A stretch of 64,000 nt of DNA from Glycera tridactyla (taxonomy: Eukaryota). The translations under genes were made by a program, and so were the position numbers. Shown piece by piece: positions 27,597 to 61,000 of the stretch. The stretch's first letter is position 1. Every line of letters begins with the position of its first letter. The notes beneath the pieces were generated by a model. That model had not been told where the DNA came from and did no database searches. It saw only the letters and a list, made by a program, of their open reading frames with translations. The stretch is taken from the NCBI GenBank assembly GCA_965644265.1, contig CBFFRO010000099.1:1-64000 (forward strand), given 5' to 3'.

Positions 27597-27804
27597 GGCC
27601 TATTTGACTGGACAGTTTCCGTTGAGTGGGCATTGCAGGACTTAACGGTTGTAGCCCAGCCGGATGGGTTTTGTTTAACGAGTTCAACGTAGTCAAATTA
27701 CCGTTGAGATTCGTATGCAATGAAAAAGTGTTGGGTGCCACCTGAATACGAAAAGTGCTCAACAGCCTGGCCGTACTCAACGAAACTGACCAGTCTAATA
27801 GGCC
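27597..27804. mobile_element. MITE with ~30-bp TIR and TA TSD at the left edge of the tandem array
   Basis: GGCCTATTTGACTGGACAGTTTCCGTTGAGT versus reverse complement of right end GGCCTATTAGACTGGTCAGTTTCGTTGAGT; TA on both sides. Confidence 0.9.
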
Positions 27805-28214
27805 TATATACACTGTCCTCTGCTGTTGATATCGAAAGAATGCCCATTTCTTCATGAGCTGTACAACATGGACCCGATGAGATAGCTGAGGAATAGCTCT
27901 TGCGACAATGATGTTTGGAACAGCATCCAGACATGATGATGACGTCAAATTGCTTTTCATGTTTAGAGAGCCAACCAATTAGTTGCTACTTTTGCTTGTC
28001 TTTCTCATGATTATTTTTCATGATCGTGGTCTCTGCCCGATAGAACATGGATTGAATAAGAGACCGAATAGTGATCGCCATGTGAAGATTTGATGACTCA
28101 AGAGGAGCTGGCCTTCAAGTTGCAGGTCCTTTCTCATGCAGCGGTGCTTTTTGGGTAGTATGACCTTAGAAATGCTTTATATTCATGTGTGTGGTGTTTC
28201 TGATGTGTTTTCAG

Positions 28215-28437
28215 TGATGAGCCTGACTTCAAGAAGAGTCAAGGGTCCGTGGAGAGTGGTGGCCTGGGATCAATGGGCGGAAGCGACGAAGACAGTATGG
28301 CCGATTACGACACGGAGGTGGACCCGGGTAAGTTCAACGAGGACGGGTCCTTTATTGGCCAGTACGGCGGCAAGACGAAGAAAGAAGAGAAAGAGCCCGA
28401 TGCCGCCTCCCCGTCTGCACTCTCCACTTTTGTATAA
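28215..28437 (+). CDS. Nrg: L1CAM-family terminal coding exon, copy 1
   Basis: GTGTTTTCAG acceptor; phase 2 matches exon 7522-7609; encodes (T)DEPDFKKSQGSVESGGLGSMGGSDEDSMADYDTEVDPGKFNEDGSFIGQYGGKTKKEEKEPDAASPSALSTFV*, with DS(M)ADY and FNEDGSFIGQY L1 signatures and T-F-V PDZ ligand. Confidence 0.97.
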
Positions 28438-31400
28438 TACACCATCCACTCTGTGGCCCCCCTTGATATTATCGAGTGTCCGAAGCAGATGCTGTTTTCG
28501 TGGTTGAGTCTACATCAATGTATCTGCTTGCGTGGATGTGTGCCAGTGTGACAAAATGCTTGCAACCTGCTCCAGTGACATGTGCCAATCTAGACACAGA
28601 AACAAGTGCAATATGGAGGTCCGTTTCATTTCTGGAAGCTGCAGTCTTCATGGTCATTCGTGGTGGTTCAGAGGTCGACAAGCACCATTATTTTCCGTAG
28701 GAATCGAGAGATTGGAAGTGCCGGTTCATCAGATGGCTTCGAGATAATCGCTAGTGTTCCTTCGTTCATTGACCGTGAAAATATTTCAGGCATTTGTGAT
28801 AATGTAACAATGTCAGGTCATCTTGGTCAGAAGGTGCTAGCCAGTTTCGAATCGACAGGGATTGAGCAGCTCTCAGGGGACCTCCTGGACCTTCAAATCC
28901 ATCATGTGGGTTAAACCCCGAAATGTACTTGCCAGGACTGAATCTTCAAATCATTGAGCGAAAGAAAACATCACAGGAATCTGCAATGAACACTTAACCG
29001 GTGGCATGTGCTGGATTTGCTTCGTGCTGTTTTGACTCGTATTCAATTTCGTGTTTGTGTGCGTAACTTTAAGACGTCCTGGTCTGACAGAAGCTGGAGC
29101 AGTCATAGTCGGGGGGCAAGAGGTCAGCCCGTCTCATACGCAAACCAAAGGAAGCAGACATTACCAGATCTGAGATAGGAAAATGACTGATATTGGTCGA
29201 TGTTGGACCACGTAAAAATTTCTGCTATTCAAGGTGGACTTGTTAGGAGCATTGATGCTGTGTAGAAACGGCCGAGAGCAAAGCAAGTGACAATGCACCT
29301 TTAGTTGGCCTAAGAGTGAATTCTTAGCCATCGCTTGTTTTCTGCAAATCCTGGTGGTGAATGATGCTTCTTGTCAAGCATGCAGTGGTCGGTAGATGAT
29401 TGCATGCCTGCCAAGATACTCCAGGCATTGTCACCATGATTGGAAAAGAATTGATGTCCGGGAATTGACACTTTGGCCCTTTAGTTTTGATCTGACGTTT
29501 GCTTCATTGTGCATCTAGCATGGTTTCTGTTGATGAGTTATAGTATTTTGTTTGTGCTGAATAGGATCCCGAGTCATGGTATCAGCCACTCGTGTAACAG
29601 TGGCTGATTGTGCATGTATGGATGGTGGTGAATACTCATTCTTGGACCGTAGCTCAAGAAATTTCATGATTCGTTCCTATCCGATCTGTTAATTTTATGA
29701 TGAGGTATTCCCGAATGGGTGTACTTATATGTGTATACTTGACCACAAAATCCTCTCTGTTTGAGCAAGTAAATTCTTGACTTGCAAGCAATCTCTAGTT
29801 TCTCTTGAGATATGCTTTGATTATCTACTTCACTCCAGAACAGTGATGTTTGCATATTGTTTATCTGGAAGACAGTAAGGATCCTTGATGATATCTCTTT
29901 TTGATTTGACATGCAATCAAAACAACTATATTTAGATATACATTTGTCACTGGCATCTTGGTGTTCTATTCAGCACTCACGGAAAATATACTCACTATCA
30001 TATTTTTTGAAATAAAGTTGCCTTATATTTTTTGAAACTGTGCTTCAACTATGCATGTGGTACACACTTTAGTCAGATTTTGTTCCTGTATTAGCTTTAT
30101 GAAAGCGCCATCTAATGGTGGGACTGAGGAGAGATTAATTATGCTGCTTGGTCTAGAGATGGCGCTAGGTGTAGTCATGAGTCCATTATTTTCACTGGTC
30201 CCCCTATGTCTGTTTTCATGCCATGTGTGTATTTCACTGCCAAAACCCATCATCATACGTAGAACTGTACATAGACATTGTGAAGGTGTGTATGCAAGTG
30301 TGAGCTTGAGCGTGAGGGTATGCGTGCAATCGTGTGTGCTTGAGCATGTGTGTGAGTGATAGATGGGTGCTTGCATAATCACACTTACAGTACAGTGGCA
30401 ATATGGGCCATAGCTGAATCTTGCTTTTTAAACGTGCTATAAGATCACACCATTTGTTATTGTCACTTAGGAATAACCTCTATGGAATCGTGTAAGGTTG
30501 TAAGCAGCATAGTATCTCTAGAAGAGGGAGCATATCAGCTCGGTATGATGAAAGAAAATGCATCAAATCTGCATCAAGTTGACAGAATCAAAACCAAAGT
30601 TTACTCACTGCACAATCTGAGGGAACATCATAAGTAATAGTGGCAGATTTTGATGGATAAAGGCAAATGACTCTCGCACTGTTTTCTCTGTCTATGTCAA
30701 AAGTGGATTTCTCTTTTTGAATGATGAGTGAGATTGGAGAAACCAACCTGATGGAGAGAGAAGTGATAGTTTTGCAATGGGCCAGTTCAGGTGTGAAATC
30801 AACTGATCCACAAAGTGTATTAAAGAGAAATACTGGTCACAAATATGGGACTGGAATGTCAATCGCTGAAATGTGTATATTCGAACGATTACAGTGTTCA
30901 TAGCAGGACAAGACAGTCGATGAATAATATGGAATGTGCAGTTGTCCATGTATTATGTGAGTGTTGTGGGATATACAAGGGTATTGTTACTTGTTCTAAA
31001 TAATTCAAGTTGCAGTGAAATGTGTCTGCTTGCATCGCTGTCTTTTGATGACCTCGTGACATTCTCTGTCATGAGAGAACATAAGAGTTGACAACAGTTT
31101 CATATAACTTGCCATTGAAATTTATGACCAATTGCTAGCTGTATGTGGATTGGCGTGTACAAGTAAATGTCTGGTTAGGCGAAACAATTATCCTGATTAT
31201 TTATTAATGTTTTTTTGTTTCTCCTAATGATATTAAAATCGTAATTCAGTTCACTGTTGCATCACCATGGAAAGATGACATTTCAAAAGATTGATGATGA
31301 TGAATAGATGAACAGATAAATGCATATAGAAATAGATAAATCGAAGGACAGTTTGATGAAGATAGTCAGAAATTGTTTGTTTGGGATTTTTTTGTATCAT

Positions 31401-32804
31401 TGATTACATGCAATGGACCTGTGAGATGGCAAAACTTCTCCCTTTTGGTAACCCACTGAGGAATTATGGCAACATACATCCATGGCTGGGACCATGTCTG
31501 ATTTCGAATGATAACAATTGAAATGTGAAATAATAATTGCGCAACAGGTCACAACTGGATGGATTTTTTGAGATCCAATTGAGTCTTCCTGACGGCTTTT
31601 AGATTAGGGGCATGGTGGCTGTCAACCACTTGCTTCATGTGTCCACCTGTTTTGTGTCCTCAGGTGCCATCTGGCTGGATGTTTCAGAACAGATGATTTT
31701 TAAGAATATGTGGCATCATATTCAGAATGTAGCTTCAATTTATCAACATTTCTGCTTTCTGATTGTTCAGTTGCTTTATTTGCCTTCGCATTCACATCAT
31801 CTGATGTCAGGTGAATGTTTTTCTTTGTTATCTTCAGTCTGTTCATTTAATGATTTGCACATTATATTATCAGTATTTTGTTTTTCATGAACAAAGGTGC
31901 TTGTATGCCTGGCCCATGTCAGTTTATATTTGAGTAAATATGAGTTTGTACTGTTATTTGTAGAATTTGTATTATACCAGTCTGTTGTTCAGCCGGAACC
32001 ACTTCATGACTCCATGTCATGCATTTGAACAGAGAAGAATCAGGCATGGTTGCTCGAATCACTGCTATTTTAACCAATGATGCTGACAGATTTTCTGTTT
32101 CCCTACTCTCTTGTGTTCAGGGTCTCTGCAAGTGACAATGCCGAGACCCCCAGTAGGTCTGGAAGGCATGGCATACATAACCATCAGCTTGATTCATGCC
32201 ATTAAACTCTAACAAACCAACAAACGGTATCTTATTACAATACAAAGGATATTATCTTTGGGTAGAATGCAATCAAGACGGGGAAGGTCTCAGTAGAACA
32301 TCTGTAATGCACGACCACAAGGTATAATGCCAGAATTTGAATTTCATGACAAAGATTGCTTGGTAGCTAGTCAGTATAAGAGGACAATCAGAAACCAGTC
32401 AGCGCTTTCGTGTCAATTTCTGCAGGATAAGCCAACTTACCTCATATTCACATTACGTTTACTGTCCAAAATCATCAATATAATCAGAGAGAGTAAATCA
32501 TGATCATCGATACTGTCCTATGTACAAGTTAAGAGTATACAGTGGGTTATTTGGGTATGGCAGCAGAGTTCTGGTGGCCATCTTTGTGTAGTATACCATT
32601 AAAGTGTGTTGCTTTGTTCTGAGTCGATGCTGCCATCATCCGGCAGTCGTCTTTTTTGGTGGCTTGTGTGTACCATACTAGTCATCTCACTATATTATGA
32701 GAGTCATGTATAAAAAAAGGAACTGAATCTGTTTATTTTGATATCTGTATGTTAAATGTTGAATGTTTTACTATGATGGAAAGATGTCATCATTCAGATT
32801 TGTC

Positions 32805-32810
32805 AATAAA
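32805..32810 (+). promoter_or_regulatory. Likely distal polyadenylation signal, copy 1 (proximal AATAAA also at 30011-30016)
   Basis: AATAAA after AT-rich UTR-like sequence, followed by GT-rich sequence and a (GT)n tract at ~32906; implies a 3'UTR of ~4.4 kb. Confidence 0.55.
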
Positions 32811-34834
32811 AGATGTTTGTCCGACCAGTGTCTCTGGTTAGACTGTATGAACATGGCTGCTTATTATAGTATCTTTGGTGTGGTTGGTGCATCGGAGTGA
32901 GCTGAGTGTGTGTGTGTTTGTGTGTGTGTGTGCATGTATTCATGAGTGAGTATATGTCTGAGTCCAAGTGTGTGTACAGTTTGTGTCTTGCAGCTAGTGA
33001 CGAGCCATTGTATCATGTTCACTTTGTTTATGGGGACATCTCGACTCTTGGAGTGTTGTCTGAATCGTCATCGGATTGGAACACTGCTAATTATTGTTTC
33101 ACTTGACGACTGTTAAACCCAGTGAAGTCAGACCATATGGAATGCAATATCACCTACTATCAGCATCAAATATGCAGCCACAAAAAAGCATGTTTGTAAT
33201 GGGCGCCCTCTAATGTTTAAGCCACCAATCCCACAATGTTGTGAAGAATCTAGACCTCGGATTGGGATGATTATTCCCTGTGATTCTGACAGGTCAGTAC
33301 AGGAGAGATGGTCAGTAACAAAAGTGTCCAACATAGCCCATGCTAGTTGCGCAAAAACAGCATGGTAACAGTATATGTAGTTACTATATCACTCCGGTAT
33401 GATTACAATGGTTTCAAGATTTAGTGCAATCATCATAGTTTCCAGTCATTGCAATAATAATCATTGCCTTGGTATGGTTTGAATACTATGGTAGTAACCA
33501 TCACATGAGTTAATCAAACATGGTTTTCCAATATCTGGAGGATAATCTTGTTGAGCTGGCTATGATAATATAGTGCTAGTTTTGGGTAACAAGATGTATT
33601 GATGATAAGGATTGTTGGCCGTAGGTGATGTTTCAATCAATCTGTGGTTTCAGTTTGCTGGGTTTATTGATGTCTTAATTTACCATAGACACTTCTAGGG
33701 TGAGCCGTGTAATGTGGGAATCTTGATGAGTGCTTGAGTCACAGAGTATGAGCTTGATTAGGATAGCTGTATTTATTCTTGCAAAGTGAGTCTTTGCGAG
33801 TGGTGCATCCACCCGCACTTAATCCGATGCTTTCACTTGTTGAAAATAAAATTTGTGCTTACTCCATATTGTGTGCAAGTGTGGAACAGATATGTGGCTT
33901 TTGAATATAAATATATATGACAGCTAGTGCGTGGGTGTGTGGAGTGAAGAACATTGCAGTCATAATGATGTCTATGTATTTGGCTGTATACTGAGAGTAC
34001 ATTGCTTGTGGCCCATTCTTTTTCGCTGAACGCTGGTCTGATTGCAAGACAACAGACCATATCAAGCACCTTGTTATGATACCATTGCATGCATGTGCAT
34101 GTAAGAGAGAGCCAGCCACTGTCCTCAAGAAATGTGTACACATACTTATCATCTAGGGAATACTGTATTTTGATTCAAATCGGCTTGAGTGTGTTTTTCA
34201 CCTTCCTCCTCTTCTGTGCGATGTTTCGTTCACCAACTTACAAAATCGAGCATGGATTGAAGGTGTATTTCATTTGTCTTCTCAATCCATGTAATGCCAC
34301 ACTAAAATCTTTGACCCAAATTATGTTTATCATATTTGTGATAATTTTTACTGTGTCCTCTTTCTCTTGAATCCCATTTTGATGCTTTGTTAATCAATGT
34401 TGGGAGGCAGATCTGCTTGTGAGCGACTAGTGGATAGCTTTTGATAGTCAATGGTGGTGTACATGTTGTCCGATGCACAGTTGGATTTGGTTGCCCTCTT
34501 CACTGTTGAAGATGAATGTATCAGAGGTAATTCACTGATTATTAGATTGAGAATGATGCCTGTAGAGCATCCAGCTTTCATAGAACACTGAGCATACATA
34601 ATCCTTCATGTTGATACAAGCCATTAATCCCCTAACCAAACAAGGGTCAGAATGAGAAAGGGATAATGCTTTGCAAGAGCTTTGGTGCCATCTCTAGCCG
34701 TTTGGAAGTCTCAAACATTGTCTGTTCAATCATCCTCTGTGCTGTGAGCATCATTCCATAAAAGTCTGAAGCCAGATAGTCTAATAGTTGAGTTTGGTCC
34801 ATAAGAGCATATGATTTTAATGCAGTGACACTGT

Positions 34835-34985
34835 TTAATGAGTGAAGACAAGTGGAAATAAGCCTTTGGATTTGAAAGCAATGGAAAGCTGGACATTAAT
34901 TCTGATTATCAATATAAGCGAAGACAAGTGGGAATAAGCCATATGGTTTTTAGAGCAATGAATAACTAGACGTAATTCTGACCAT
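34835..34985. repeat. ~76-bp degenerate minisatellite (about 2.5 units at 46266-46460 and 58009-58205; shortened here)
   Basis: AAAGCAATGGAAAGCTGGACATTAATTCTGA recurs at 76-77-bp spacing (46273, 46349, 46426). Confidence 0.8.
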
Positions 34986-37594
34986 GTTGATGAGAGAATA
35001 CAAGTGGTCAGCCTACTCTTGCTGACGCTAATTGGCAAGAGGTTTCACATCATGGCCTCCTAGTAATTGTGTTGACTGTTGGTGAAAATCAGCCATGCAA
35101 GAGAATCATTTCAAAATCAGCCATGCAAGAGAATCATTACTTTTGGATGGGTGAGACGCAATAGGTTTGATATTGGTGTAATTCCATATCTTTCAATTCT
35201 TGTTCTAGTTATCACTATTCACCTCTATCCTTACATTTGATTGTGTGATTGTTTTGGAACTGGTTGTTGGGCATTTGGTGCATCAGCTAATACACTGACT
35301 TCCTTTAAGCTGCGGATGATGTGGATCAAGCCTTGGCATCATTATTCCACTAAATATTTGGTGTGGGGCAGGTTACGGGTCGTTGCTAGCCGACAATGCA
35401 CCATTTGTGGCCCCAAACCAATTGCATCCTTGGATGGCATAAGCCATAGTCATCTCCCTTCAGTGATTTGCCACTCAGACACACCACCTTGGTGAGGACC
35501 TCAGCCATCTCAAATTCATTATCAGTATTGCAAATATTTTTGTTCAACTTATTGCTTATGGGTATATCTGTTTTGATAAGATAGTGACACTGCTCATCCG
35601 AGTCAACAACTGACATTCAAGTTGCTATAATACTCATATGATTATTTATTGATGAACAGGTGCCATTGTATCTCATTCCCAATACTCGTCATCATTAGTT
35701 GGCTTGATGTGTATCTGGTGGCATTCACTGATGGCATCACCTTCACCTGCATCCCCATCAACCGCCTGATGCCCAGCATCCGATTCATCCTTTGCTGGAT
35801 GAACTCAACTCGATCATGATCCTATGATAGATGTGGAAGCTTCATGCCATAGGATTATGGAGTGAAGTGAACTTCTTTCAGCAATGGATCGAATCACGAA
35901 CCATCTTTTCATCAGGGTTTATGTTACAGTTGAACACATTTTTTGAGTTTCACATAAGTTTGTAATGAATCCTCCTGTCCTTCCAAGAGAAGGACTTTGA
36001 TTAAAGCTTTCCTCGTTATTTTGTATGCCACTGATGTATGTTGAATAAAATTTCATGTATCAAAAAAGGCAGTGTATGTCTTTCGTGTTCTCTTCCAAGG
36101 TATGAGTGTGTGAAATGACATGTTGGGAATTGTATATGCATCATCTTCCTTTTTTCTTCTGGCAATCAGGCCTGATCACAATAATTGAACTGGATGAATT
36201 TGATAGTAGAATTTCAACAACCAATGGGGACCCAGATGGAGAAGTCTTGAATGATCCAAATCCATACTAATTGCACGGGCATCAAGAACCTTATCCTATG
36301 AATTTAATTCAAGGCCGAATTTTGAAGTTTCTCGAATAATTCTCTTCGGAGGACCAGTAGAGATCTGAATAAGGTACATTGAGAGCTATGTGATATTCTT
36401 TACAAACAGATTCCAATAGCCCTTGCTGCTCGCTCGATTGACAGCAGCATGCATTCTCTTGCAAAACGTCAACAATTGTTAGCTGCAACTGGACACCCTG
36501 CTGCATTTGGGGCCATTGGACTTGAGTTCATGTTAGAATGGAACAAACATCCAAGGGGATGCAGCATGAAGCACATATGACACTGGATCAGTGCCCTCCT
36601 ATACAGCCAATTTCTGAGCCTACAAAGAACTATAAAAACAAATTTCATGTAACATCGCAGTATGATAATGATATAGCTGGAAGAACAGGGATACGAACAA
36701 GAAACGCTAGAGCTTGCTCCCAAACTAAGTTTCCAAGACATCCAGGGAAAACCTGCTGATGAAGATGCCTGGCAATCTAAAACAAATGTGACAAAGTCTA
36801 AATTATAGAAACAGGACGACTACAGAATTCTCCACAATGATAAATGAATACACAACATCATAGAAGATGGAGAAGATGGAACTGAATCTACTAACTCATG
36901 AGTTTTTCCCCCATGAGGGAAAATAAGACATATTCACCCATTGTATCGTGACAACATATACCAAGTACCTATTCACACCTGAGTGAAGTAATGTGATGGT
37001 CCCATTCAGTGCTGTCCACACACATGCAAGTACCTCCTGTGCAAGAAGTACAGATCCTATAGATCTGTGTGATGGTGCAGGTATGTTACTGAATGGTGAA
37101 CCTTGTCCATTTCGGTCACCCATCTGAGGAGGAGTCCTGTGTCAGGTTGCCGAAACACCATTCAGTGAACCGGCTGTGAGAATAGGGTCAATAGATATTG
37201 AATCATGTTGTCAGCAGTTTGTGGTTTACCACTCCAAATACGCTTCTCTTTTTCATAATTACGAACTCTCACCTCTAAATCCATTGAGGGCCCAAGAGGC
37301 AGTATCAGTGACTTGAGCAACTAGATTTCACACATTCAGATAGCATGAGTGCCACAGTATAGCCCTGGTGGTGCAAAGAAGATGGTGAGTAACTGATCAA
37401 TCCACATTCTCATGAAGGTACTGTTGTGCTGATGTATCACAAGATTTGGTTGCCGAGTAAGATCTCTGTTACTGTCTGAACAGTCAGACCTGCTCGAGAG
37501 ATCACCTCCTACCTGCAAAGATGGATCACCCTGAGTTGCAACATGACATTATTCTCTACGGAAAACAACCTCTATCACTGGCACAATGCCTGTA

Positions 37595-37756
37595 CAGTCA
37601 AACCTGCTCGAGAGATCGCCTCCTACCTGCAAAGATGAACCACCCTGAGTTGCAACATGATATCCTCTAGAGAAAATGACCTCTATTCAAAGACCACCTG
37701 TCCCCAAAAACCACTTTTCAATGCAACCAGGAGTGGTCTCTGTACATAGGTCCACT
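37595..37756. mobile_element. Degenerate TA-target MITE preceded by a direct duplicate of its left half (~37481-37575); repeated at 49116-49277
   Basis: CAGTCAAACCTGCTCGAGAGATC start; ACCTGCTCGAGAGATC..CTCCTACCTGCAAAGATG appears twice. Confidence 0.7.
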
Positions 37757-38399
37757 CCACCTTACTAGGACATCTAGACTAGAGTAGCATTTTACACTGA
37801 AACAGGTGGGGATAATCTTGGTTTGATTGCATCACTGAGCCTGACCCTACTTCGTCCTGCATATTGAATTTGTACAGGAGCAGATTTTGTAGCAGAATAT
37901 CCAATGTATAAGCAAACGTATAGATATCAAAGTTGTTTTATTTCTTCATACAACCAATACGGGATCGACCTCATTATGAGCATTTATTAGTCAAATTTGG
38001 TAACATGGTTAACTCGATCACAAGCCACCCAGCAGCAACAGCATGGACTCAGTGTGTTCGCACTCTTAAGAAAATTTGGGAAGATTCACCTATTTTGAAT
38101 GATTCACCGTAGCGAACGAATGCTAGGAGGTGGACTGTTCATTTGCCTGTTTGAGTCTAACGTCCTCTCAACCGCCTTGGGTTATATGAGACTGAATAAG
38201 TGAAAATGCTGACATTGCGACATGCCCTGGACCAGCCAGCCCTGTCCATAGAACATGACCAGGCAGTGATCATGATCAGGCTGCTTTCAGAACTGGCAGT
38301 GGGCATTGGAGTGTGCATGGAATCAATCAGATGACTTGATGACATCACACCATGCATTCCCTTTGTTTTTAGCACTGAACCATGTAATTAGCTGAATGC

Positions 38400-38660
38400 T
38401 ATTTATGTTATTCCAATCGACAATTGTTTTCGGTATCAGTCGACACGACTCCAAACTCCAAAGTGTGAGGATCCCATGCCCTAGAGCTGTACTCTAGTAT
38501 TGGTCGTACTAGGATCATATATGATAAAAGTTTCAGTTCTGGACTGCAAGCACCAATATTACGTCTGAGTACGCATAACACTCTACTGGCCCTGCTGCAA
38601 ATGTAATCTATGTGTGTGTTCCAGTTCATTTTTTCATGGAGTTGCACCCCTAGATACCAT
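38400..38660 (-). mobile_element. Truncated non-LTR retrotransposon (L2/CR1-group LINE) ORF2 C-terminal remnant
   Basis: YLGVQLHEKMNWNTHIDYICSRASRVLCVLRRNIGACSPELKLLSYMILVRPILEYSSRAWDPH plus PKTIVDWN, the typical post-RT motifs of these LINEs, with an internal deletion. Confidence 0.9.
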
Positions 38661-39007
38661 GGGTTGGATTCAACTGTTGCCAATGGAGCACCACAAAGGT
38701 GATACTGGTGTAGGTGGTACGTGGTGGTGTAGGTGGAGTTATGTAGGTGATGGTGGTGTTTACTCGAGTGAGGGGAACTGCATCACTGGCGCATGAATAC
38801 AAGCTGCCGATACAAGTTGCTGCTCATTGTTTGAACCAAGCAGACATGTACTTCTATTATACACATAGTAAGGTTTCTATTCCACATAATCACCAGGATG
38901 GCAGTGCTCTAGATTTCATTTCCCATTATAGTTCTTGGTCTACCAATCGCTTATTGGCTCAGGCTGACCTGACCTTGACCGTGACCTCGTCGTTGTCGTT
39001 GTCATTA

Positions 39008-44211: not shown

Positions 44212-44217
44212 AATAAA
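44212..44217 (+). promoter_or_regulatory. Distal polyadenylation signal, copy 2
   Basis: AATAAA at the position homologous to 32805. Confidence 0.5.
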
Positions 44218-44310
44218 AGATGTTTGTCCAACCAGTGTCTCTGGTTAGACTGTATGAACATGGCTGCTTATTATAGTATCTTTGGTGTGGTTGGTGCATC
44301 GGAGTGAGCT

Positions 44311-44358
<48 letters not shown>

Positions 44359-49969: not shown

Positions 49970-50225
49970 TCTATGTTATTCCAATCGACAATTGTTTTCG
50001 GTATCAGTCGACACGACTCCAAACTCCAAAGTATGAGGATCCCATGCCCTAGATCTGTACTCTAGTATTGGTCGTACTAGGATCATATATGATAAAAGTT
50101 TCAGTTCTGGACTGCAAGCACCAATATTGCGTCTGAGTACGCATAACACTCTACTGGCCCTGCTGCAAATGTAATCTATGTGTGTGTTCCAGTTCATTTT
50201 TCATGGAGTTGCACCCCTAGATACC
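49970..50225 (-). mobile_element. LINE ORF2 remnant, copy 2 (extra 1-nt frameshift)
   Basis: MNWNTHIDY...LVRPILEY...WDPH and PKTIVDWN; T-run one base shorter than in copy 1. Confidence 0.9.
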
Positions 50226-50574
50226 ATGGGTTGGATTCAACTGTTGCCAATGGAGCACCACAAAGGTGATACTGGTGTAGGTGGAACGTGGTGGTGTAGG
50301 TGGAGTTATGTAGGTGATGGTGGTGTTTACTCAAGTGAGGGGAACTGCATCACTGGCGCATGAATACAAGCTGCCGACACAAGTTGCTGCTCATTGTTTG
50401 AACCAAGCAGACATGTACTTCTATTATACACATAGTAAGGTTTCTATTCCACATAATCACCAGGATGGCAGTGCTCTAGATTTCATTTCCCATTATAGTT
50501 CTTGGTCTACCAATCTCTTATTGGCTCAGGCTGACCTGACCTTGACGGTGACCTCGTCGTTGTCGTTGTCGTTA

Positions 50575-50786
50575 GGCCTATTCGACTGGTAGGTCTCGTT
50601 GAAAGTGCATTTACGGAAATTTACTTAACGGTCGTAGCCCACCCGAATAGGTTTCGTTTAACGAGTTCAACGTAGTCAAATAACCGTTGAGATTCGTATG
50701 CAATGAAAAAGTGTTGAGTGCCACCCGAATACGAAAAGTGCTCAACAGCCTGGCCGTACTCAACGAAACCGACAGTCTAATAGGCA
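50575..50786. mobile_element. GGCCTATT-TIR MITE at the unit 2/3 junction (chimeric)
   Basis: Same structure as 39008-39220. Confidence 0.9.
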
Positions 50787-51192
50787 TATTTACACTGTCC
50801 TCTGCTGTTGATATCGAAAGAATGCCCATTTCTTCATGAGCTGTACAACATGGACCCGATGAGATAGCTGAGGAATAGCTCTTGCGACAATGATGTTTGG
50901 AACAGCATCCAGACATGATGATGACGTCAAATTGCTTTTCATGTTTAGAGAGCCAACCAATGAGTTGCTACTTTTGCTTGTCTTATGATTATTTTTCATG
51001 ATCTTGGTCTCTGCCCGATAGAATACGGATTGAATAAGAGACTGAATTGTGACCGTCATGTGAAGATTTGACGACTCAAGAGGAGCTGGCCTTCAAGTTG
51101 CAGGTCCTTTCTCATGCAGCAGTGCTTTTTGGGTAGTATGACCTCAGAAATGCTTTATATTCATTTGTGTGGTGTTTCTGATGTGTTTTCAG

Positions 51193-51415
51193 TGATGAGC
51201 CCGACTTCAAGAAGAGTCAAGGGTCCATGGAGAGTGGTGGCCTGGGATCAATGGGCGGAAGCGATGAAGACAGTATGGCCGATTACGACACGGAAGTGGA
51301 CCCGGGTAAGTTCAACGAGGACGGGTCCTTTATTGGCCAGTACGGCGGCAAGACGAAGAAAGAAGAGAAAGAGCCCGATGCCGCCTCCCTGTCTGCACTC
51401 TCCACTTTTGTATAA
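51193..51415 (+). CDS. Nrg: Duplicated terminal exon, copy 3 (intact; V>M and P>L relative to copy 1)
   Basis: Acceptor and stop intact; GTG>ATG and CCG>CTG plus three synonymous differences from copy 1. Confidence 0.8.
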
Positions 51416-51856
51416 TACACCATCCACTCTGTGGCCCCCCTTGATATTATCGAGTGTCCGAAGCAGATGCTGTTTTCGTGGTTGAGTCTACATCAATGTA
51501 TCTGCTTGCGTGGATGTGTGCCAGTGTGACAAAATGCTTGCAACCTGCTCCAGTGACATGTGCCAATCTAGACACAGAAACAAGTGCAATATGGAGGTCC
51601 GTTTCATTTCTGGAAGCTGCAGTCTTCATGGTCATTCGTGGTGGTTCAGAGGTCGACAAGCACCATTATTTTCCGTAGGAATCGAGAGATTGGAAGTGCC
51701 GGTTCATCAGATGGCTTCGAGATAATCGCTGGTGTTCCGTCGTTCATTGACCGTGAAAATATTTCAGGCATTTGTGATAATGTAACAATGTCAGGTCATC
51801 TTGGTCAGAAGGTGCTAGCCAGTTTCGAATCGACAGGGATTGAGCAGCTCTCAGGG

Positions 51857-52238
51857 GACCTCCTGGACCTTCAAATCCATCATGTGGGTTAAACCCCGAA
51901 ATGTACTTGCCAGGACTGAATCTTCAAATCATTGAGCGAAAGAAAACATCACAGGAATCTGCAATGAACACTTAACCGGTGGCATGTGCTGGATTTGCTT
52001 CGTGCTGTTTTGACTCGTATTCAATTTCGTGTTTGTGTGCGTAACTTTAAGACGTAACTTTAAGACGAAATTGAATACGAGTCAAAACAGCACGAAGCAA
52101 ATCCAGCACATGCCACCGGTTAAGTGTTCATTGCAGATTCCTGTGATGTTTTCTTTCGCTCAATGATTTGAAGATTCAGTCCTGGCAAGTACATTTCGGG
52201 GTTTAACCCACATGATGGATTTGAAGGTCCAGGAGGTC
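51857..52238. repeat. 174-bp inverted repeat (arms 51857-52030 and 52065-52238, 34-nt spacer)
   Basis: Right arm is the reverse complement of the left arm with no mismatch found by eye; absent from units 1 and 2. Confidence 0.97.
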
Positions 52239-55200
52239 TGACAGAAGCTGGAGCAGTCATAGTCGGGGGGAAAGAGGTCAGCCCGTCTCATACGCAAACC
52301 AAAGGAAGCAGACATTACCAGATCTGAGATAGGAAAATGACTGATATTGGTCGATGTTGGACCACGCAAAAATTTCTGCTATTCAAGGTGGACTTGTTAG
52401 GAGCATTGATGCTGTGTAGAAACGGCCGAGAGCAAAGCAAGTGACAATGCACCTTTAGTTGGCCTAAGAGTGAATTCTTAGCCATCGCTTGTTTTCTGCA
52501 AATCCTGGTGGTGAATGATGCTTCTTGTCAAGCATGCAGTGGTCGGTAGATGATTGCATGCCTGCCAAGATACTCCAGGCATTGTCACCATGATTGGAAA
52601 AGAATTGATGTCCGGGAATTGACACTTTGGGCCTTTAGTTTTGATCTGACGTTTGCTTCATTGTGCATCTAGCATGGTTTCTGTTGATGAGTCATAGTAT
52701 TTTGTTTGTGCTGAATAGGATCCCGAGTCATGGTATCAGCCACTCATGTAACAGTGGCTGATTGTGCATGTATGGATGGTGGTGAATACTCATTCTTGGA
52801 CCGAAGCTCAAGAAATTTCATGATTCGTTCCTATCCGATCTGTTAATTTTATGATGAGGTATTCGCGAATGGGTGTACTCATATGTGTATACTTGACCAC
52901 AAAATCCTCTCTGTTTGAGCAAGTAAATTCTTGACTTGCAAGCAATCTCTAGTTTCTCTTAAGATATGCTTTGATTATCTACTTCGCTCCAGAACAGTGA
53001 TGTTTGCATATTGTTTATCTGGAAGACAGTAAGGATCCTTGATGATATCTCTTTTCGATTTGACATGCAATCAAAACAACTATATTTAGATATACATTTG
53101 TCACTGGCATCTTGGTGTTCTATTCAGCACTCACGGAAAATATACTCACTATCATATTTTTTGAAATAAAGTTGCCTTATATTTTTTGAAACTGTGCTTC
53201 AACTATGCATGTGGTACACACTTTAGTCAGATTTTGTTCCTGTATTAGCTTTATGAAAGCGCCATCTAATGGTGGGACTGAGGAGAGATTAATTATGCTG
53301 CTTGGTCTAGAGATGGCGCTAGTTGTAGTCATGAGTCCATTATTTTCACTGGTCCCCCTATGTCTGTTTTCATGCCATGTGTGTATTTCACTGCCAAAAC
53401 CCATCATCATACGTAGAACTGTACATAGACATTGTGAAGGTGTGTATACAAGTGTGAGCTTGAGCGTGAGGGTATGCGTGCAATCGTGTGTGCTTGAGCA
53501 TGTGTGTGAGTGATAGATGGATACTTGCATAATCACACTTACAGTACAGTGGCAATATGGGCCATGGCTGAATCTTGCTTTTTAAACGTGCTATAAGATC
53601 ACACCATTTATTATTGTCACTTAGGAATAACCTCTATGGAATCGTGTAAGGTTGTAAGCAGCATAGGATCTCTAGAAGAGGGAGCATATCAGCTCGGTAT
53701 GATGAAAGAAAATGCATCAAATCTGCATCAAGTTGACAGAATCGAAACCAAAGTTTACTCACTGCACAATCTGAGGGAACATCATAAGTAATAGTGGCAG
53801 ATTTTGATGGATAAAGGCAAATGACTCTCGCACTGTTTTCTCTGTCTATGTCAAAAGTGGATTTCTCTTTTTGAATGATGAGTGAGATTGGAGAAACCAA
53901 CCTGATGGAGAGAGAAGTGATAGTTTTGCAATGGGCCAGTTCAGGTGTGAAATCAACTGATCCACAAAGTGTATTAAAGAAAAATACTGGTCACAAATAT
54001 GGGACTGGAATGTCAATCACTGAAATGTGTATATTCGAACGATTACAGTGTTCATAGCAGGACAAGACAGTCGATGAATAATATGGAATGTGCAGTTGTC
54101 CATGTATTATGTGAGTGTTGTGGGATATACAAGGGTATTGTTACTTGTTCTAAATAATTCAAGTTGCAGTGAAATGTGTCTGCTTGCATCGCTGTCTTTT
54201 GATGACCTCGTGACATTCTCTGTCATGAGAGAACATAAGAGTTGACAACAGTTTCATATAACTTGCCATTGAAATTTATGACCAATTGCTAGCTGTATGT
54301 GGATTGGCGTGTACAAGTAAATGTCTGGTTAGGCGAAACAATTATCCTGATTATTTATTAATGTTTTTTTGTTTCTCCTAATGATATCAAAATCGTAATT
54401 CAGTTCACTGTTGCATCACCATGGAAAGATGACATTTCAAGAAATTGATGATGACAAATAGATGAACAGATAAATGCATATAGAAATAGATAAATCGAAG
54501 GACAGTTTGATGAAGATAGTGAGAAATTGTTTGTTTGGGATTTTTTTGTATCATTGATTACATGAAATGGACCTGTGAGATGGCAAAACTTCTCCCTTTT
54601 GGTAACCCACTGAGGAATTATGGCAACATACATCCATGGCTGGGACCATGTCTGATTTCGAATGATAACAATTGAAATGTGAAATAATAATTGCGCAACA
54701 GGTCACAACTGGATGGATTTTTTGAGATCCAATTGAGTCTTCCTGACGGCTTTTAGATTAGGGGCATGGTGGCTGTCAACCACTTGCTTCATGTGTCCAC
54801 CTGTTTTGTGTCCTCAGGTGCCATCTGGCTGGATGTTTCAGAACAGATGATTTTTAAGAATATGTGGCATCATATTCAGAATGTAGCTTCAATTTATCAA
54901 CATTTCCGCTTTCTGATTGTTCAGTTGCTTTATTTGCCTTCGCATTCACATCATCTGATGTCAGGTGAATGTTTTTCTTTGTTATCTTCAGTCTGTTCAT
55001 TTAATGATTTGCACATTATATTATCAGTATTTTGTTTTTCATGAACAAAGGTGCTTGTATGCCTGGCCCATGTCAGTTTATATTTGAGTAAATATGAGTT
55101 TGTACTGTTATTTGTAGAATTTGTATTATACCAGTCTGTTGTTCAGCCGGAACCACTTCATGACTCCATGTCATGCATTTGAACAGAGAAGAATCAGGCA

Positions 55201-55957
55201 TGGTTGCTCGGATCACTGCTATTTTAACCAATGATGCTGACAGATTTTCTGTTTCCCTACTCTCTTGTGTTCAGGGTCTCTGCAAGTGACAATGCCGAGA
55301 CCCCCAGTAGGTCTGGAAGGCATGGCATACATAACCATCAGCTTGATTCATGCCATTAAACTCTAACAAACCAACCAACGGTATCTTATCACAATACAAA
55401 GGATATTCTCTTTGGGTAGAATGCAATCAAGACGGAGAAGGTCTCAGTAGAACATCTGTAATGCACGACCACAAGGTATAATGCCAGAATTTGAATTTCA
55501 TGACAAAGATTGCTTGGTAGCTAGTCAGTATAAGAGGACAATCAGAAACCAGTCAGCACTTTCGTGTCAATTTCTGCAGGATAAGCCAACTTACCTCATA
55601 TTCATATTACGTTTACTGTCCAAAATTATCAATATAATCAGAGAGAGCAAATCATGATCATCGATACTGTCCTATGTACAAGTTAAGGGTATACAGTGGG
55701 TTATTTGGGTATGGCAGCAGAGTTCTGGTGGCCATCTTTGTGTAGTATACCATTAAAGTGTGTTGCTTTGTTCTGAGTCAATGCTGCCATCATCCGGCAG
55801 TCGTCTTTTTTGGTGGCTTGTGTGTACCATACTAGTCATCTCACTATATTATGAGAGTCATGTATAAAAAAGGAACTGAATCTGTTTATTTTGATATCTG
55901 TATGTTAAATGTTGAATGTTTTACTATGATGGAAAGATGTCATTATTCAGATTTGTC

Positions 55958-55963
55958 AATAAA
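55958..55963 (+). promoter_or_regulatory. Distal polyadenylation signal, copy 3
   Basis: AATAAA at the position homologous to 32805. Confidence 0.5.
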
Positions 55964-58028
55964 AGATGTTTGTCCGACCAGTGTCTCTGGTTAGACTGTA
56001 TGAACATGGCTGCTTATTATAGTATCTTTGGTGTGGTTGGTGCATCGGAGTGAGCTGAGTGTGTGTGTGTGTGTGTGTGTTTGTGTGTGTGTGTGCATGT
56101 ATTCATGAGTGAGTATATGTCTGAGTCCAAGTGTGTGTACAGTTTGTGTCTTGCAGCTAGTGACGAGCCATTGTATCATGTTCACTTTGTTTATGGGGAC
56201 ATCTTGACTCTTGGAGTGTTGTCTGAATCGTCATCGGATTGGAACACTGCTAATTATTGTTTCACTTGACGACTGTTAAACCCAGTAAAGTCAGACCATA
56301 TGGAATGCAATATCACCTACTATCAGCATCAAATATGCAGCCACAAAAAAGCATGTTTGTAATGGGCGCCCTCTAATGTTTAAGCCACCAATCCCACAAT
56401 GTTGTGAAGAATCTAGACCTCGGATTGGGATGATTATTCCCTGTGATTCTGACAGGTCAGTACAGGAGAGATGGTCAGTAAAAAAAGTGTCCAACATAGC
56501 CCATGCTAGTTGCGCAAAAACAGCATGGTAACAGTATATGTAGTCACTATATCACTCCAGTATGATTACTATGGTTTCAAGATTTAGTGCAATCATCATA
56601 GTTTCCAGTCATTGCAATAATAATCATTGCCTTGGTATGGTTTGAATACTATGGTAGTAACCATCACATGAGTTAATCAAACATGGTTTTCCAATATCTG
56701 GAGGATAATCTTGTTGAGCTGGCTATGATAATATAGTGCTAGTTTTGGGTAACAAGATGTATTGATGATAAGGATTGTTGGCCGTAGGTGATGTTTCAAT
56801 CAATCTGTGGTTTCAGTTTGCTGGGTTTATTGATGTCTTAATTTACCATAGACACTTCTAGGGTGAGCCGTGTAATGTGGGAATCTTGATGAGTGCTTGA
56901 GTCACAGAGTATGAGCTTGATTAGGATAGCTGTATTTATTCTTGCAAAGTGAGTCTTTGCGAGTGGTGCATCCACCCGCACTTAATCCGATGCTTTCACT
57001 TGTTGAAAATAAAATTTGTTCTTACTCCATATTGTGTGCAAGTGTGGAACAGATATGTGGCTTTTGAATATAAATATATATGACAGCTAGTGCGTGGGTG
57101 TGTGGAGTGAAGAACATTGCAGTCATAATGATGTCTATGTATTTGGCTGTATACTGAGAGTACATTGCTTGTGGCCCATTCTTTTTCGCTGAACGCTGGT
57201 CTGATTGCAAGACAACAGACCATATCAAGCACCTTGTTATGATACCATTGCATGCATGTGCATGTAAGAGAGAGCCAGCCACTGTCCTCAAGAAATGTGT
57301 ACACATACTTATCATCTAGGGAATACTGTATTTTGATTCAAATCGGCTTGAGTGTGTTTTTCACCTTCCTCCTCTTCTGTGCGATGTTTCGTTCACCAAC
57401 TTACAAAATCGAGCATGGATTGAAGGTGTATTTCATTTGTCTTCTCAATCCATGTAATGCCACACTAAAATCTTTAACCCAAATTATGTTTATCATATTT
57501 GTGATAATTTTTACCGTGTCCTCTTTCTCCTGAATCCCATTTTGATGCTTTGTTAATCAATGTTGGGAGGCAGATCTGCTTGTGAGCGACTAGTGGATAG
57601 CTTTTGATAGTCAATGGTGGTGTACATGTTGTCCGATGCACAGTTGGATTTGGTTGCCCTCTTCACTGTTGAAGATGAATGTATCAGAGGTAATACACTG
57701 ATTATTAGATTGAGAATGATGCCTGTAGAGCATCCAGCTTTCATAGAACACTGAGCATACATAATCCTTCATGTTGATACAAGCCATTAATCCCCTAACC
57801 AAACAAGGGTCAGAATGAGAAAGGGATAATGCTTTGCAAGAGCTTTGGTGCCATCTCTAGCCGTTTGGAAGTCTCAAACATTGTCTGTTTAATCATCCTC
57901 TGTGCTGTGAGCATCATTCCATAAAAGTTTGAAGCCAGATAGTCTAATAATTGAGTTTGGTCCATAAGAGCATATGATTTTAATGCAGTGACACTGCTTC
58001 CTCGGTTTCGATTTCAAAGCAATGGAAA

Positions 58029-61000
58029 GCTGGACATTAATTCTGACTATCTTAATGAGTGAAGACAAGTGGAAATAAGCCTTTGGATTTGAAAGCAATG
58101 GAAAGCTGGACATTAATTCTGATTATCAATATAAGAGAAGACAAGTGGGAATAAGCCATATGGTTTTTAGAGCAATGAATAACTAGACGTAATTCTGACC
58201 ATGTTAATGAGAGAATACAAGTGGTCAGCCTACTCTTGCTGACGCTAATTGGCAAGAGGTTTCACATCATGGCCTCCTAGTAATTGTGTTGACTGTTGGT
58301 GAAAATCAGCCATGCAAGAGAATCATTTCAAAATCAGCCATGGAAGAGAATCATTACTTTTGGATGGGTGAGTCGCAATAGGTTCGATATTGGTGTAATT
58401 CCATATCTTTCAATTCTTATTCTAGTTATCAATATTCACCTCTATCCTTACATTTGATTGTGTGATTGTTTTGGAACTGGTTGTTGGGCATTTGGTGCAT
58501 CAGCTAATACACTGACTTCCTTTAAGCTGCGGATGATGTGGATCAAGCCTTGGCATCATTATTCCACTAAATATTTGGTGTGGGGCAGGTTACGGGTCGT
58601 TGCTAGCCGACAATGCACCATTTGTGGCCCCAAACCAATTGCATCCTTGGATGGCATAAGCCATAGTCATCTCCCTTCAGTGATTTGCCACTCAGACACA
58701 CCACCTTGGTGAGGACCTCAGCCATCTCAAATTCATTATCAGTATTGCAAATATTTTTGTTCAACTTATTGCTTATGGGTATATCTGTTTTGATAAGATA
58801 GTGACACTGCTCATCCGAGTTAACAACTGACATTCAAGTTGCTATAATACTCATATGATTATTTATTGATGAACAGGTGCCATTGTATCTCATTCCCAAT
58901 ACTCGTCATCATTAGTTGGCTTGATGTGTATTTGGTGGCATTCACTGATGGCATCACCTTCACCTGCATGCCCATCAACCGCCTGATGCCCAGCATCCCA
59001 TTCATCCTTTGCTGGATGAACTATCTCTATCATGATCCTATGGGGGATAGTATCCACATTTGCCACCACCCGGTCATCGCATCAGTTTGTGTCTGCACCA
59101 TCGATGTGCCTGTGACAACTAGAATAGCTGCACCATCTGATGTGCCAACTGGTATAACCAGGAATTGGAATCTTTCTAATCGTTCTATTGCAAACACTGT
59201 CAAATCTTCTGTTGTCACTCATCTTTGATCCGATGATCCCTGGTTCAATTAGGGTACTAGCATGAACAGCAAGCATTTTGATCTGTATATCATTTCACCG
59301 TTCTTTGGGGAACAAAGAGCACTCGTGAATGATGGCACCCATTCCCATTGAATGGGCATCTCGATGTAGCCCAGATGGTGCTCACAAGATGTTAAACCAC
59401 CAATTGACCACCAATCTTCAAAATTGTAATCATCACTGCACTTTCATCATATTTTAGTATCACTGGAAACGTTGGGATTGATGAAGTTTACTTCTTGCTT
59501 CATATCGAAGGTTGACAGGCAAATGTGGAAGCTTCATGCCATAGGATTATAGAGTGAGGTGAACTTCTTTCAGCAATGAATCGAATCACGAACCATCTTG
59601 TCATCATGGTTTATGTTACAGTTGAACACATTTTTTGAGTTTCACATAAGTTTGTAATGAATCCTCCTGTCCTTCCAAGAGAAGGACTTTGATTAAAGCT
59701 TTCCTCGTTATTTTGTATGCCACTGATGTATGTTGAATAAAATTTCATGTATCAAAATAGGCAGTGTATGTCTTTCTTGTTCTCTTCCAAGGTATCAGTG
59801 TGTGGAATGACATGTTGGGAATTGTATAAGCATCATATTCCTTTTTTTCTTCTGGCAATCAGGCCTGATCACAATGATTGCACTGGATGAATTTAGTAGT
59901 ATAATTTCAACAACCAATGGGGACCCAGATGGAAAAGTCTTGAATGATCCAAATCCATACCTTTTGCATGGGCATCAAAAACCTTATCCTATGAATTTAA
60001 TTCAAGGCCGAATTTTGAAGTTTCTCGAATAATTCTCTTCGGAGGACCAGTAGAGATCTGAATAAGGTACATTGGGAGCCATGTGATATTCTTTACAAAC
60101 AGATTCCAATAGCCCTTGCTGCTTGATTGACAGCAGCATGCATTCTCTTGCAAAACGTTAACAATTGTTAGCTGCAACTGGACACCCTGCTGCATTTGGG
60201 GCCATTGGACTTGAGTCCATATTAGAATGGAACAAACATCCAAGGGACTGCAGCATTAAGCACACATGACACTGGATCAGTGCCCTCCTATACAGCCAAT
60301 TTCTGAGCCTACGAAGAACTATAGAATCAAATTTCATATAACATCGCAGTATGATGATGATATATCTGGAAGAATAGGGATACGAACAAGAAACGCTAGA
60401 GCTGGCTCCCAAACCAAGTTTCCAAGACATTCAGGGAAAACCTGCTGATGAAGATGCCTTGCAGATGCCGTGGCAGCCTAAAACAGGAACAGAAACCAAG
60501 ATTGCCTATCCTCGTAATACATGGACTGGTTATACCAAATGTGACAAAGGCTAAATTAAAGAAACAGGACAACTACAGAATTCACCACGATGAAAGATGA
60601 ATACACAACATTATAGAAGATAGAGAGGATGGAACTGAATCTACTAACTCATGAGTATTCCCTTGAGTTGAATAAAATGGGAAAATAAGACATATTCACC
60701 CTTTGAGGCTGGACATTAATTCTGACTATCTTAATGAGTGAAGACAAGTGGAAGCCTTTGGATTTGAAAGCAATGGAAAGCTGGACATCAATTTCTGATT
60801 ATCAATATAAGCGAAGACAAGTGGGAATAAGCCATGTGGTTTTTGGAGCAATGAATAACTGGACGTAATTCTGACCATGTTGATGAGAGAATACAAGTGG
60901 TCAGCCTACTCTTGCTGACCCTAATTGGCAAGCGGTTTCACATCATGGCCTCCTAGTAATTGTGTTGACTGTTGGTTAAAATCAGCCATGCAAGAGAATC

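What the first reader, a model, noticed from the sequence alone, without database searches (positions are those of the whole stretch)
27673..60707. Terminal exon plus entire 3'UTR triplicated in a ~11.5-kb tandem array
Three units each keep an intact acceptor, the 223-nt FIGQY/STFV exon, a ~4.4-kb UTR and poly(A) signals, so the gene has three potential alternative last exons. Three distinct versions with private indels cannot be just two alleles of one locus placed in tandem, though one unit could still be an uncollapsed haplotype because the assembly contains sized gaps. Partial 3' gene multiplication with intact signals could let last-exon choice select different UTRs.
Basis: partly seen in the sequence, partly recalled or inferred. 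Interest (0 to 1): 0.8.

Follow-up and report, generated by a model that had tools for sequence, protein, structure and literature searches.

The report
Repeated end-piece of a nerve-adhesion gene
The last coding piece and trailing untranslated region of a worm's L1-type nerve-cell adhesion gene really are repeated head to tail (three times here, four times on the main chromosome copy), most likely an ordinary copy-number variant made by recombination between two small jumping-gene copies, with no sign yet that the extra copies are used.

Summary
The window has three head-to-tail units of about 11.5 kb (27640-39055, 39056-50622, 50623-60707). Each has the same acceptor, an intact 223-nt FIGQY...STFV terminal exon (Pfam Bravo_FIGEY) and the same poly(A) signals.

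The window is the first 64 kb of a 72-kb unplaced scaffold that runs parallel to chromosome C17. C17 carries four units with no gaps, so the whole scaffold is probably the other haplotype, not one stacked unit.

Each unit junction sits inside a chimeric MITE of about 220 bp. That points to unequal recombination between two MITE copies, followed by further unequal crossing-over. The units are mosaics, copy number differs (3 vs 4), and the third unit ends in a nested 2.68-kb repeat.

RNA contigs from four runs splice two micro-exons (12 and 21 nt) onto the terminal exon. Each run gives essentially one sequence version, and no position-specific marker lies in the transcribed part, so use of the downstream copies is untested.

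Six of seven copies encode the same peptide, so this is not a device for protein diversity.

My verdict is a real but ordinary TE-mediated partial-gene duplication and copy-number variant. The alternative-last-exon function is possible but unsupported. Other notes of this scan cover the micro-exons and a hairpin in copy 3, not this array.

The parts
27640..39055 (+). Unit 1 of the tandem array: the last 575 bp of the final intron, the terminal exon, the 3'UTR and downstream segments B, C1 and X.
   Evidence: Self-BLAST. Homology to units 2 and 3 starts at 27640.
39056..50622 (+). Unit 2 of the array, with the same content as unit 1. It carries 37 private substitutions in the first 7.3 kb.
50623..60707 (+). 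Unit 3 of the array, the last one. It has intron end, exon and UTR like the others. Its distal part is the diverged B' segment, and it lacks C1-X.
60708..64000 (+). Nested 2.68-kb tandem repeat of segment B'. Copies start at 58029, 60708 and 63384, and the third runs on to about 66007 of the scaffold. The C17 version has only 1.3 copies.
28215..28437 (+). Terminal-exon coding part, copy 1 (S DEPDF...FIGQY...STFV, then stop).
   Evidence: (Bravo_FIGEY 8e-12)
39627..39849 (+). Terminal-exon coding part, copy 2. It encodes the same peptide, with 3 synonymous changes (one shared with copy 3).
   Evidence: RNA contigs begin at this acceptor.
51193..51415 (+). Terminal-exon coding part, copy 3. It has two amino-acid changes (V to M and P to L).
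27595..27813 (+). MITE copy in the last intron with terminal inverted repeats. This is the 'a' parent of the junction repeat.
39006..39224 (+). Chimeric MITE at the junction of units 1 and 2. Its 5' about 80 nt are of another type, and its 3' about 140 nt are the same as the intronic copy.
50573..50791 (+). Chimeric MITE at the junction of units 2 and 3.
37767..39000 (+). Segment X. It is found only between units (again at 49336-50567) and nowhere else in the genome apart from TE fragments. It is absent after the last unit.
44212..44217 (+). AATAAA about 4.4 kb after the stop of copy 2. The equivalents are at 32805 and 55958. A (GT)n tract follows at 44313-44356.
21492..21512 (+). 21-nt micro-exon spliced directly onto the terminal exon in RNA.
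11833..11844 (+). 12-nt micro-exon spliced in front of the 21-nt micro-exon in RNA.
7522..7609 (+). 88-nt cytoplasmic exon (VYEKEKLRAQ...GGFGEYTRT). It is in phase with the micro-exons.
   Evidence: Its link to the micro-exons is inferred from reading frame and splice sites, not seen in RNA.

Best explanation
This is a real tandem segmental duplication with variable copy number at the 3' end of an L1CAM-family (neuroglian/NrCAM-like) gene.

The first duplication most likely arose by unequal (non-allelic) homologous recombination between two direct copies of a MITE of about 220 bp. One copy lay 0.6 kb upstream of the terminal exon in the last intron. The other lay about 11.4 kb further downstream. 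Later unequal crossing-over and gene conversion between units changed the copy number (3 on this scaffold, 4 on chromosome C17) and shuffled variants among copies. A separate junction without homology made the nested 2.68-kb repeat at the distal end.

Functionally, the first acceptor to be transcribed and the first set of poly(A) sites probably finish the mRNA. The downstream units would then be largely silent spare copies that would encode the same tail if used. On this reading the array is a near-neutral structural polymorphism, not an isoform-generating device.

Shown: the structure, the chimeric junction repeat, the copy-number difference, the mosaicism, and the splicing and extent of the transcript. 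Inferred: the recombination mechanism, the order of events and the silence of the downstream copies.
For: **The array is real.**
- There are three units in the window and four gap-free units at C17:22.45-22.49 Mb.
- The assembly holds seven distinct versions of the exon and UTR, 0.4-1.5% apart.
- The 72-kb scaffold is collinear with C17 over its whole length.

**Mechanism.**
- Each junction is a full-length MITE from a family with more than 2000 first-look candidates in the genome.
- Its first about 80 nt differ from the first-unit copy, including a 6-bp indel. Its last about 140 nt are identical to the first-unit copy and share that copy's private changes against other family members.

**Ongoing exchange.**
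- Site patterns are incompatible along the unit: 0110000 in the intron part against 0011100 in the UTR.
- The distal parts of the three internal C17 units differ by only 0.02-0.16%. The two on this scaffold differ by 1.35%.

**Redundancy.**
- The peptide is identical in 6 of 7 copies, and the acceptors are the same.
- The unit contains no other ORF of 125 aa or more.

**RNA.**
- Contigs start at the acceptor, and their upstream letters match the two micro-exons. There is no coverage of 39201-39600.
- In each run a single contig covers most of the UTR, and one run has a 5.7-kb contig across all of it.
- None of the variants private to unit 2 appears in the contigs.
Against: - No read-level DNA evidence could be obtained. 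No DNA run was listed for the junction, so copy numbers rest on the assembly alone.
- The model predicts that segment X and the parental downstream MITE should remain after the last unit. They are absent there on both versions. This needs either a later deletion or a crossover between divergent haplotypes.
- Substitutions in the seven exon copies are 7 synonymous to 2 non-synonymous (P about 0.008-0.04). That would be odd if downstream copies drifted freely, although exchange with a selected copy can explain it.
- The RNA comes from other individuals and is only available as contigs, which drop rare variants.
Confidence: 0.68

Rival explanations
1. The array works as a set of alternative last exons. 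The 21-nt micro-exon is spliced to any of the 3-4 acceptors after read-through of the earlier poly(A) sites. This gives mRNAs with the same or nearly the same protein but different UTR versions, for example the copy-3 UTR with its 177-nt inverted duplication.
For: - All copies keep intact acceptors, reading frames and poly(A) signals.
- Coding changes are mostly synonymous.
- Transcripts do read through at least the AATAAA at 44212.
- Copy 3 of this scaffold has a private inverted duplication in its UTR.
- Other notes of this scan report true alternative terminal-exon arrays elsewhere in this genome (unchecked).
Against: - The copies are too young (0.4-1.5% apart) for intactness to mean much.
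- Each of the four RNA runs gives one long, unbranched contig, not a tangle of several 1%-different versions.
- No contig covers the stretch between one unit's transcribed part and the next acceptor. A spliced-out intron would not be covered either.
- Copy number differs between the two versions, which is unusual for a fixed regulatory device.
Confidence: 0.12
2. The copy number is an assembly artefact. The true locus would have one or two units, and the assembler laid divergent haplotypes or reads end to end.
For: - The window lies on a small unplaced scaffold of exactly 72,000 bp that contains stretches of N.
- The distal parts of C17 units 1 and 2 differ by only 0.02%.
- No DNA runs were available to check depth.
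Against: - The junction sequence (X plus a chimeric MITE plus intron) occurs five times, with small differences, on two separately assembled sequences.
- The array on C17 has no N, and neither does the array part of the window.
- Seven distinct exon and UTR versions exceed what two alleles can supply.
- An assembler does not create a chimeric transposon at a join.
Confidence: 0.07
3. The scaffold is not the second haplotype of the C17 locus but a separate, paralogous copy of the whole region of at least 72 kb elsewhere in the genome. The gene's 3' half would then exist at two loci.
For: Flank identity to C17 is only 82-96%, well below the 98-99.6% inside the array.
Against: - Collinearity is complete from base 1 to base 72000.
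- The scaffold is unplaced and short, as haplotigs usually are.
- Only these two places in the genome hold the exon.
- Indels inflate the apparent flank divergence.
Confidence: 0.1

Closest known systems
Tandem duplications mediated by transposable elements through non-allelic homologous recombination (for example the TE-mediated rearrangements catalogued in human genomes, PMC9675761; NAHR is called the prevailing model for tandem direct duplications in PMC3744419)
   Same: Two direct copies of an interspersed repeat flank the duplicated segment. The junction carries a hybrid repeat. The units lie head to tail. Copy number then varies by unequal crossing-over.
   Different: The repeat here is a MITE of about 220 bp in an annelid. 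The expected intact distal parent repeat and segment X are missing after the last unit, so the simple two-repeat model needs an extra step.
Segregating partial-gene tandem duplications in natural populations (for example Drosophila yakuba and D. simulans, PMC4069613)
   Same: It is a young duplication that covers only part of a gene and is polymorphic in copy number.
   Different: It has been amplified to 3-4 units and captures exactly the acceptor, last exon, UTR and poly(A) module, so the parent gene is not disrupted.
Alternative last exons of L1-type genes, such as Drosophila neuroglian Nrg167/Nrg180 (from my own knowledge), and the alternative terminal-exon arrays noted elsewhere in this genome by the scan (unchecked)
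   Same: Several candidate last exons lie in a row behind a shared upstream gene body.
   Different: Those exons encode different tails. Here six of seven copies encode the same 74 residues, and no RNA evidence shows use of more than one.
Vertebrate NrCAM and neurofascin cytoplasmic tails (from my own knowledge; FIGQY and ankyrin binding are treated in PMC9396398 and PMC2173803)
   Same: Both have the Bravo_FIGEY domain, the FIGQY motif, micro-exons in the tail, and a C-terminal S/T-x-V end (TFV here, SFV in NrCAM).
   Different: This is an invertebrate gene. Orthology to a particular vertebrate paralogue was not tested.

Membership tests
L1CAM family (L1 / NrCAM / neurofascin / neuroglian) | Cytoplasmic Bravo_FIGEY domain (Pfam PF13882) | tested here: met
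   E = 8e-12, 46.6 bits (cut-off 23.8), profile positions 37-85; all 7 genomic copies score above the cut-off.
L1CAM family (L1 / NrCAM / neurofascin / neuroglian) | FIGQY ankyrin-binding motif in the tail | tested here: met
   FIGQY is present in all seven copies.
L1CAM family (L1 / NrCAM / neurofascin / neuroglian) | Single transmembrane helix followed by KRxxGGKYxV, with Ig and FN3 domains upstream | tested here: inconclusive
   The TM exon with ...[11 protein letters not shown] is at ...-6064. No Ig or FN3 exons were found in the 32 kb upstream that was examined, and I did not look further.
NAHR-type tandem duplication | Homologous direct repeats at both breakpoints, with a hybrid repeat at each junction | tested here: met
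   there is a full-length MITE at 27595 and chimeric MITEs at 39006 and 50573 (and at the three C17 junctions).
NAHR-type tandem duplication | The intact distal parent repeat is retained after the last unit | tested here: not met
   X and the distal MITE are absent after the last unit on both versions. Homology to the flank stops at 37766/66719.
NAHR-type tandem duplication | Copy-number variation and exchange between units | tested here: met
   There are 3 vs 4 units, mosaic site patterns and very unequal divergence between units.
Functional alternative-last-exon array | The exons encode different products, or the UTRs are clearly diverged | tested here: not met
   the peptide is identical in 6 of 7 copies; the UTRs are 0.4-1.5% apart.
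Functional alternative-last-exon array | mRNAs ending in more than one of the units | tested here: inconclusive
   each run gives one dominant version, and the variants private to unit 2 are absent. The RNA is from other individuals, and no position-specific marker lies in the transcribed part.
Assembly artefact (stacked haplotypes) | At most two distinct versions, or gaps at the joins, or absence from the main chromosome | tested here: not met
   There are seven versions, no N in either array and four units on C17.

The most novel reading that the evidence does not exclude
The 3' module (acceptor, last exon, UTR, poly(A) sites) is kept as a copy-number-variable cassette. Transcripts that read through the first unit would be finished at later units. 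Animals with different copy numbers or copy variants, such as the copy with a 177-nt perfect hairpin in its UTR, would then differ in mRNA stability, localisation or dsRNA-dependent regulation of an axonal adhesion molecule.
Probability: 0.08. Interest if true: 0.6.

Novelty: new member of a known kind. Interest (0 to 1): 0.27.

Why it matters
It is a clean example of how a small transposon can multiply the complete 3' processing module of a gene without breaking the gene, and of how fast such an array changes (3 vs 4 units, and 1.3 vs about 3 copies of the nested repeat, within one assembly). Arrays like this are the likely raw material for true alternative-last-exon systems, which other notes of this scan report elsewhere in this genome. 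This one would be an early, still redundant stage.

For annotation, only one terminal exon should be attached to the gene unless RNA shows otherwise. The 72-kb scaffold should be treated as a second version of the C17 locus, not as extra gene content.

Tried and rejected
- **DNA support for the junctions.** A search of public runs with 36800-39620 listed none. Depth and junction-spanning reads could therefore not be checked.
- **Telling the expressed copy from RNA variants.** Most differences between the contigs and the stretch I laid them on are private to unit 2. The contigs match the consensus of the other six copies about equally well (25-36 of 38-40 sites). Sites shared only by the two first units lie in the intronic MITE, not in the mRNA. 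The method cannot decide with RNA from other individuals.
- **A second gene inside the unit that might explain the amplification.** There is no ORF of 125 aa or more on either strand.
- **A neighbouring gene downstream.** I found only low-complexity and transposon-like ORFs within 40 kb.
- **Ig and FN3 exons.** None was recognisable by eye in the 32 kb upstream on C17. I did not pursue this, nor the large protein search, because the Pfam match already names the family.
- **The junction repeat as a SINE.** I rejected my first guess. The copies have about 17-nt terminal inverted repeats, so it is a MITE.
- **A simple one-step NAHR.** I rejected this because X and the distal repeat are missing after the last unit, and the last unit's distal part is 5-13% diverged.
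Full report
**1. What is in the sequence**

A self-comparison of the window finds three head-to-tail units: 27640-39055 (11,416 bp), 39056-50622 (11,567 bp) and 50623-60707. They are 97.6-98.8% identical. The third unit is not complete. After about 8.2 kb of high identity (about 1% substitutions), its distal part is 5-13% diverged from the other two units and then loses homology. It runs into a nested tandem repeat of 2.68 kb, with copies starting at 58029, 60708 and 63384. The only N runs in the window (1483-1639 and 19782-19926) lie far upstream of the array.

Each unit holds:
- the last 575 bp of an intron;
- an acceptor (...ttttcag);
- a 223-nt coding stretch ending in TAA, at 28215-28437, 39627-39849 and 51193-51415;
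- the same set of AATAAA/ATTAAA signals, including an AATAAA about 4.4 kb after the stop, at 32805, 44212 and 55958.

**2. The gene**

The exon peptide (S)DEPDF...FNEDGSFIGQY...STFV matches Pfam Bravo_FIGEY positions 37-85, with E = 8e-12. This is the cytoplasmic tail of the L1CAM family.

Upstream in the window lie:
- the transmembrane exon (...[11 protein letters not shown], ending at 6064);
- an 88-nt exon at 7522-7609 (VYEKEK...GGFGEYTRT);
- two micro-exons, of 12 nt (11833-11844) and 21 nt (21492-21512).

All of these are in phase with the terminal exon. Other notes of this scan call the animal an annelid and the 21-nt exon real. I confirmed the 21-nt exon independently (section 5).

**3. 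Where the window sits**

The window is the first 64 kb of scaffold C118, which is only 72,000 bp long. The exon occurs at just seven places in the 2.04-Gb assembly: three on C118 and four on chromosome C17, at 22,451-22,486 kb on the minus strand, spaced about 11.58 kb apart.

C118 is collinear with C17 from its first base to its last. Identity is 82-96% in the flanks and 98-99.6% in the array. On C17 the four units are contiguous with no N, and adjacent units are 99.3% identical.

The simplest reading is that C118 is the alternative haplotype of the C17 locus. A paralogous copy is not excluded. Either way, the array was assembled twice independently, with different copy numbers:
- 3 vs 4 units;
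- about 3 vs 1.3 copies of the nested 2.68-kb repeat.

It is not one unit but the whole scaffold that is the second version.

**4. How the array arose**

Each junction lies inside a repeat of about 220 bp that has more than 2000 first-look candidates across the genome. Aligned with eight other family members, it has terminal inverted repeats of about 17 nt, so it is a MITE.

The copy at the start of unit 1 (27595-27813) has a diverged 5' part with a 6-bp deletion; its counterpart on C17 is the same. All five junction copies have a different, more consensus-like 5' part of about 80 nt. Their 3' part of about 140 nt is identical to the first-unit copy and shares its private changes. A hybrid repeat of this kind is the signature of unequal homologous recombination between two repeat copies. 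NAHR is described as the prevailing model for tandem direct duplications (PMC3744419), and TE-mediated rearrangements are common (PMC9675761).

One prediction fails. The 1.2-kb segment X (37767-39000) precedes each junction MITE. It occurs only between units, not after the last one, and nowhere else in the genome apart from transposon fragments. The last unit's distal segments are also much more diverged than the rest.

A crossover between two divergent haplotypes, only one of which carried X and the distal MITE, would explain both facts. So would a later deletion. This step is inference.

**5. RNA evidence**

Eight public runs with small contig sets (28-88 million letters for a 2-Gb genome) hold 76-86% of the words of 28100-33000. 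I laid four of them on 39001-45000.

- In every run a contig starts at the acceptor. The 30 letters that run on upstream match the 12-nt and 21-nt micro-exons joined together. There is no coverage of 39201-39600. These are therefore spliced RNA.
- Coverage is continuous from the acceptor to 44301, breaks only at a (GT)n tract that the tool skips (44302-44370), and resumes in contigs that continue about 1-1.3 kb beyond 45000.
- The transcribed stretch therefore passes the AATAAA at 44212 and reaches about 46300. That is a UTR of at least 4.5 kb and probably about 6.5 kb. The distal contigs could belong to another transcript.
- Only short MITE fragments with loose ends lie on the junction itself.

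**6. Which copies are used?**

Of the 40 listed differences between the contigs and unit 2, about 25 are private to unit 2. The contigs carry the letter shared by the other six copies. Each run gives one long unbranched contig over most of the UTR, up to 5.7 kb. Only one run has short two-way bubbles. Seven equally expressed versions differing by 1% would have fragmented the contigs. So one version, or two, dominates.

This cannot be assigned to unit 1. The animals are not the assembled one, since some contig variants occur in none of the seven copies. The only sites specific to the first units lie in the intronic MITE.

**7. Evolution of the copies**

- Pairwise substitution differences over the first 7.3 kb are 0.4-1.5%, with no positional orthology between the two versions.
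- Informative sites fall in blocks with incompatible groupings. This shows exchange among units and between haplotypes.
- The distal parts of the three internal C17 units differ by only 0.02-0.16%, so amplification there is very recent.
- The coding part has nine variable sites, seven synonymous and two not. Both non-synonymous changes are in the last unit of C118. The excess of synonymous changes is modest (P = 0.008, or 0.04 if CpG transitions are weighted tenfold). Variants that arose in a selected copy and were passed on by exchange could explain it.
- The unit holds no other ORF of 125 aa or more.

**8. Verdict**

The best explanation is a young, MITE-mediated, copy-number-variable tandem duplication of the gene's 3' module. 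The first unit probably completes the mRNA, and the other units are probably redundant.

Partial-gene tandem duplications that segregate in populations are well known (PMC4069613). This is a new example of a known kind. The idea that the units act as alternative last exons selecting different UTRs remains possible but has no support. It needs RNA and DNA from the same animal.

Noticed in passing
window 11833-11844: This 12-nt micro-exon (GCCATCCAAAGT, adding PSKV) has good splice sites. It is joined to the 21-nt micro-exon and the terminal exon in RNA contigs of all four runs. The near-place look-up of earlier scan notes listed the 21-nt micro-exon and a 15-nt candidate, but not this one.
   Followed up: partly
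window 51857-52033 and 52062-52238: Unit 3 alone carries an inverted duplication of 177 nt of its own UTR (99% complementary, 28-nt loop). It is absent from the other six copies. It may be a real fold-back insertion or a long-read artefact. In an mRNA it would form a long perfect hairpin.
   Followed up: partly
window 58029-64000 (to about 66007 on the scaffold): A nested 2.68-kb tandem repeat has about 3 copies here and 1.3 on C17. The copy-to-copy junction shows no repeat and at most 1-2 nt of shared letters, so it arose by a different mechanism from the main array.
   Followed up: partly
window 27595-27813 and more than 2000 first-look candidates genome-wide: This MITE family of about 220 bp has terminal inverted repeats of about 17 nt (TAGGCCTATTCGACTGG...), probably flanked by TA. 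Copies are 85-92% alike.
   Followed up: partly
L039 (G000:C7:17136019-17141377); fragment at window 38757-38980: An element of about 4.6 kb has 500-bp terminal direct repeats (99.6% identical, not inverted) around a 707-aa ORF that matches the Mutator-like transposase (Pfam PF20700, 2e-51). This is an unusual end structure for a MULE. A 224-bp piece of its repeat lies in segment X.
   Followed up: partly
window 1-27600 against C17:22.487-22.514 Mb: The flanks of the two versions are only 82-96% identical. The array and the 3.7 kb before it are 98-99.6% identical. So the array region has been exchanged between haplotypes far more recently than its surroundings.
   Followed up: no
window 44212-46300: RNA contigs continue through the AATAAA at 44212 and the (GT)n tract to about the start of segment B. 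Either the main 3'UTR is about 6.5 kb or a second transcript overlaps it.
   Followed up: no
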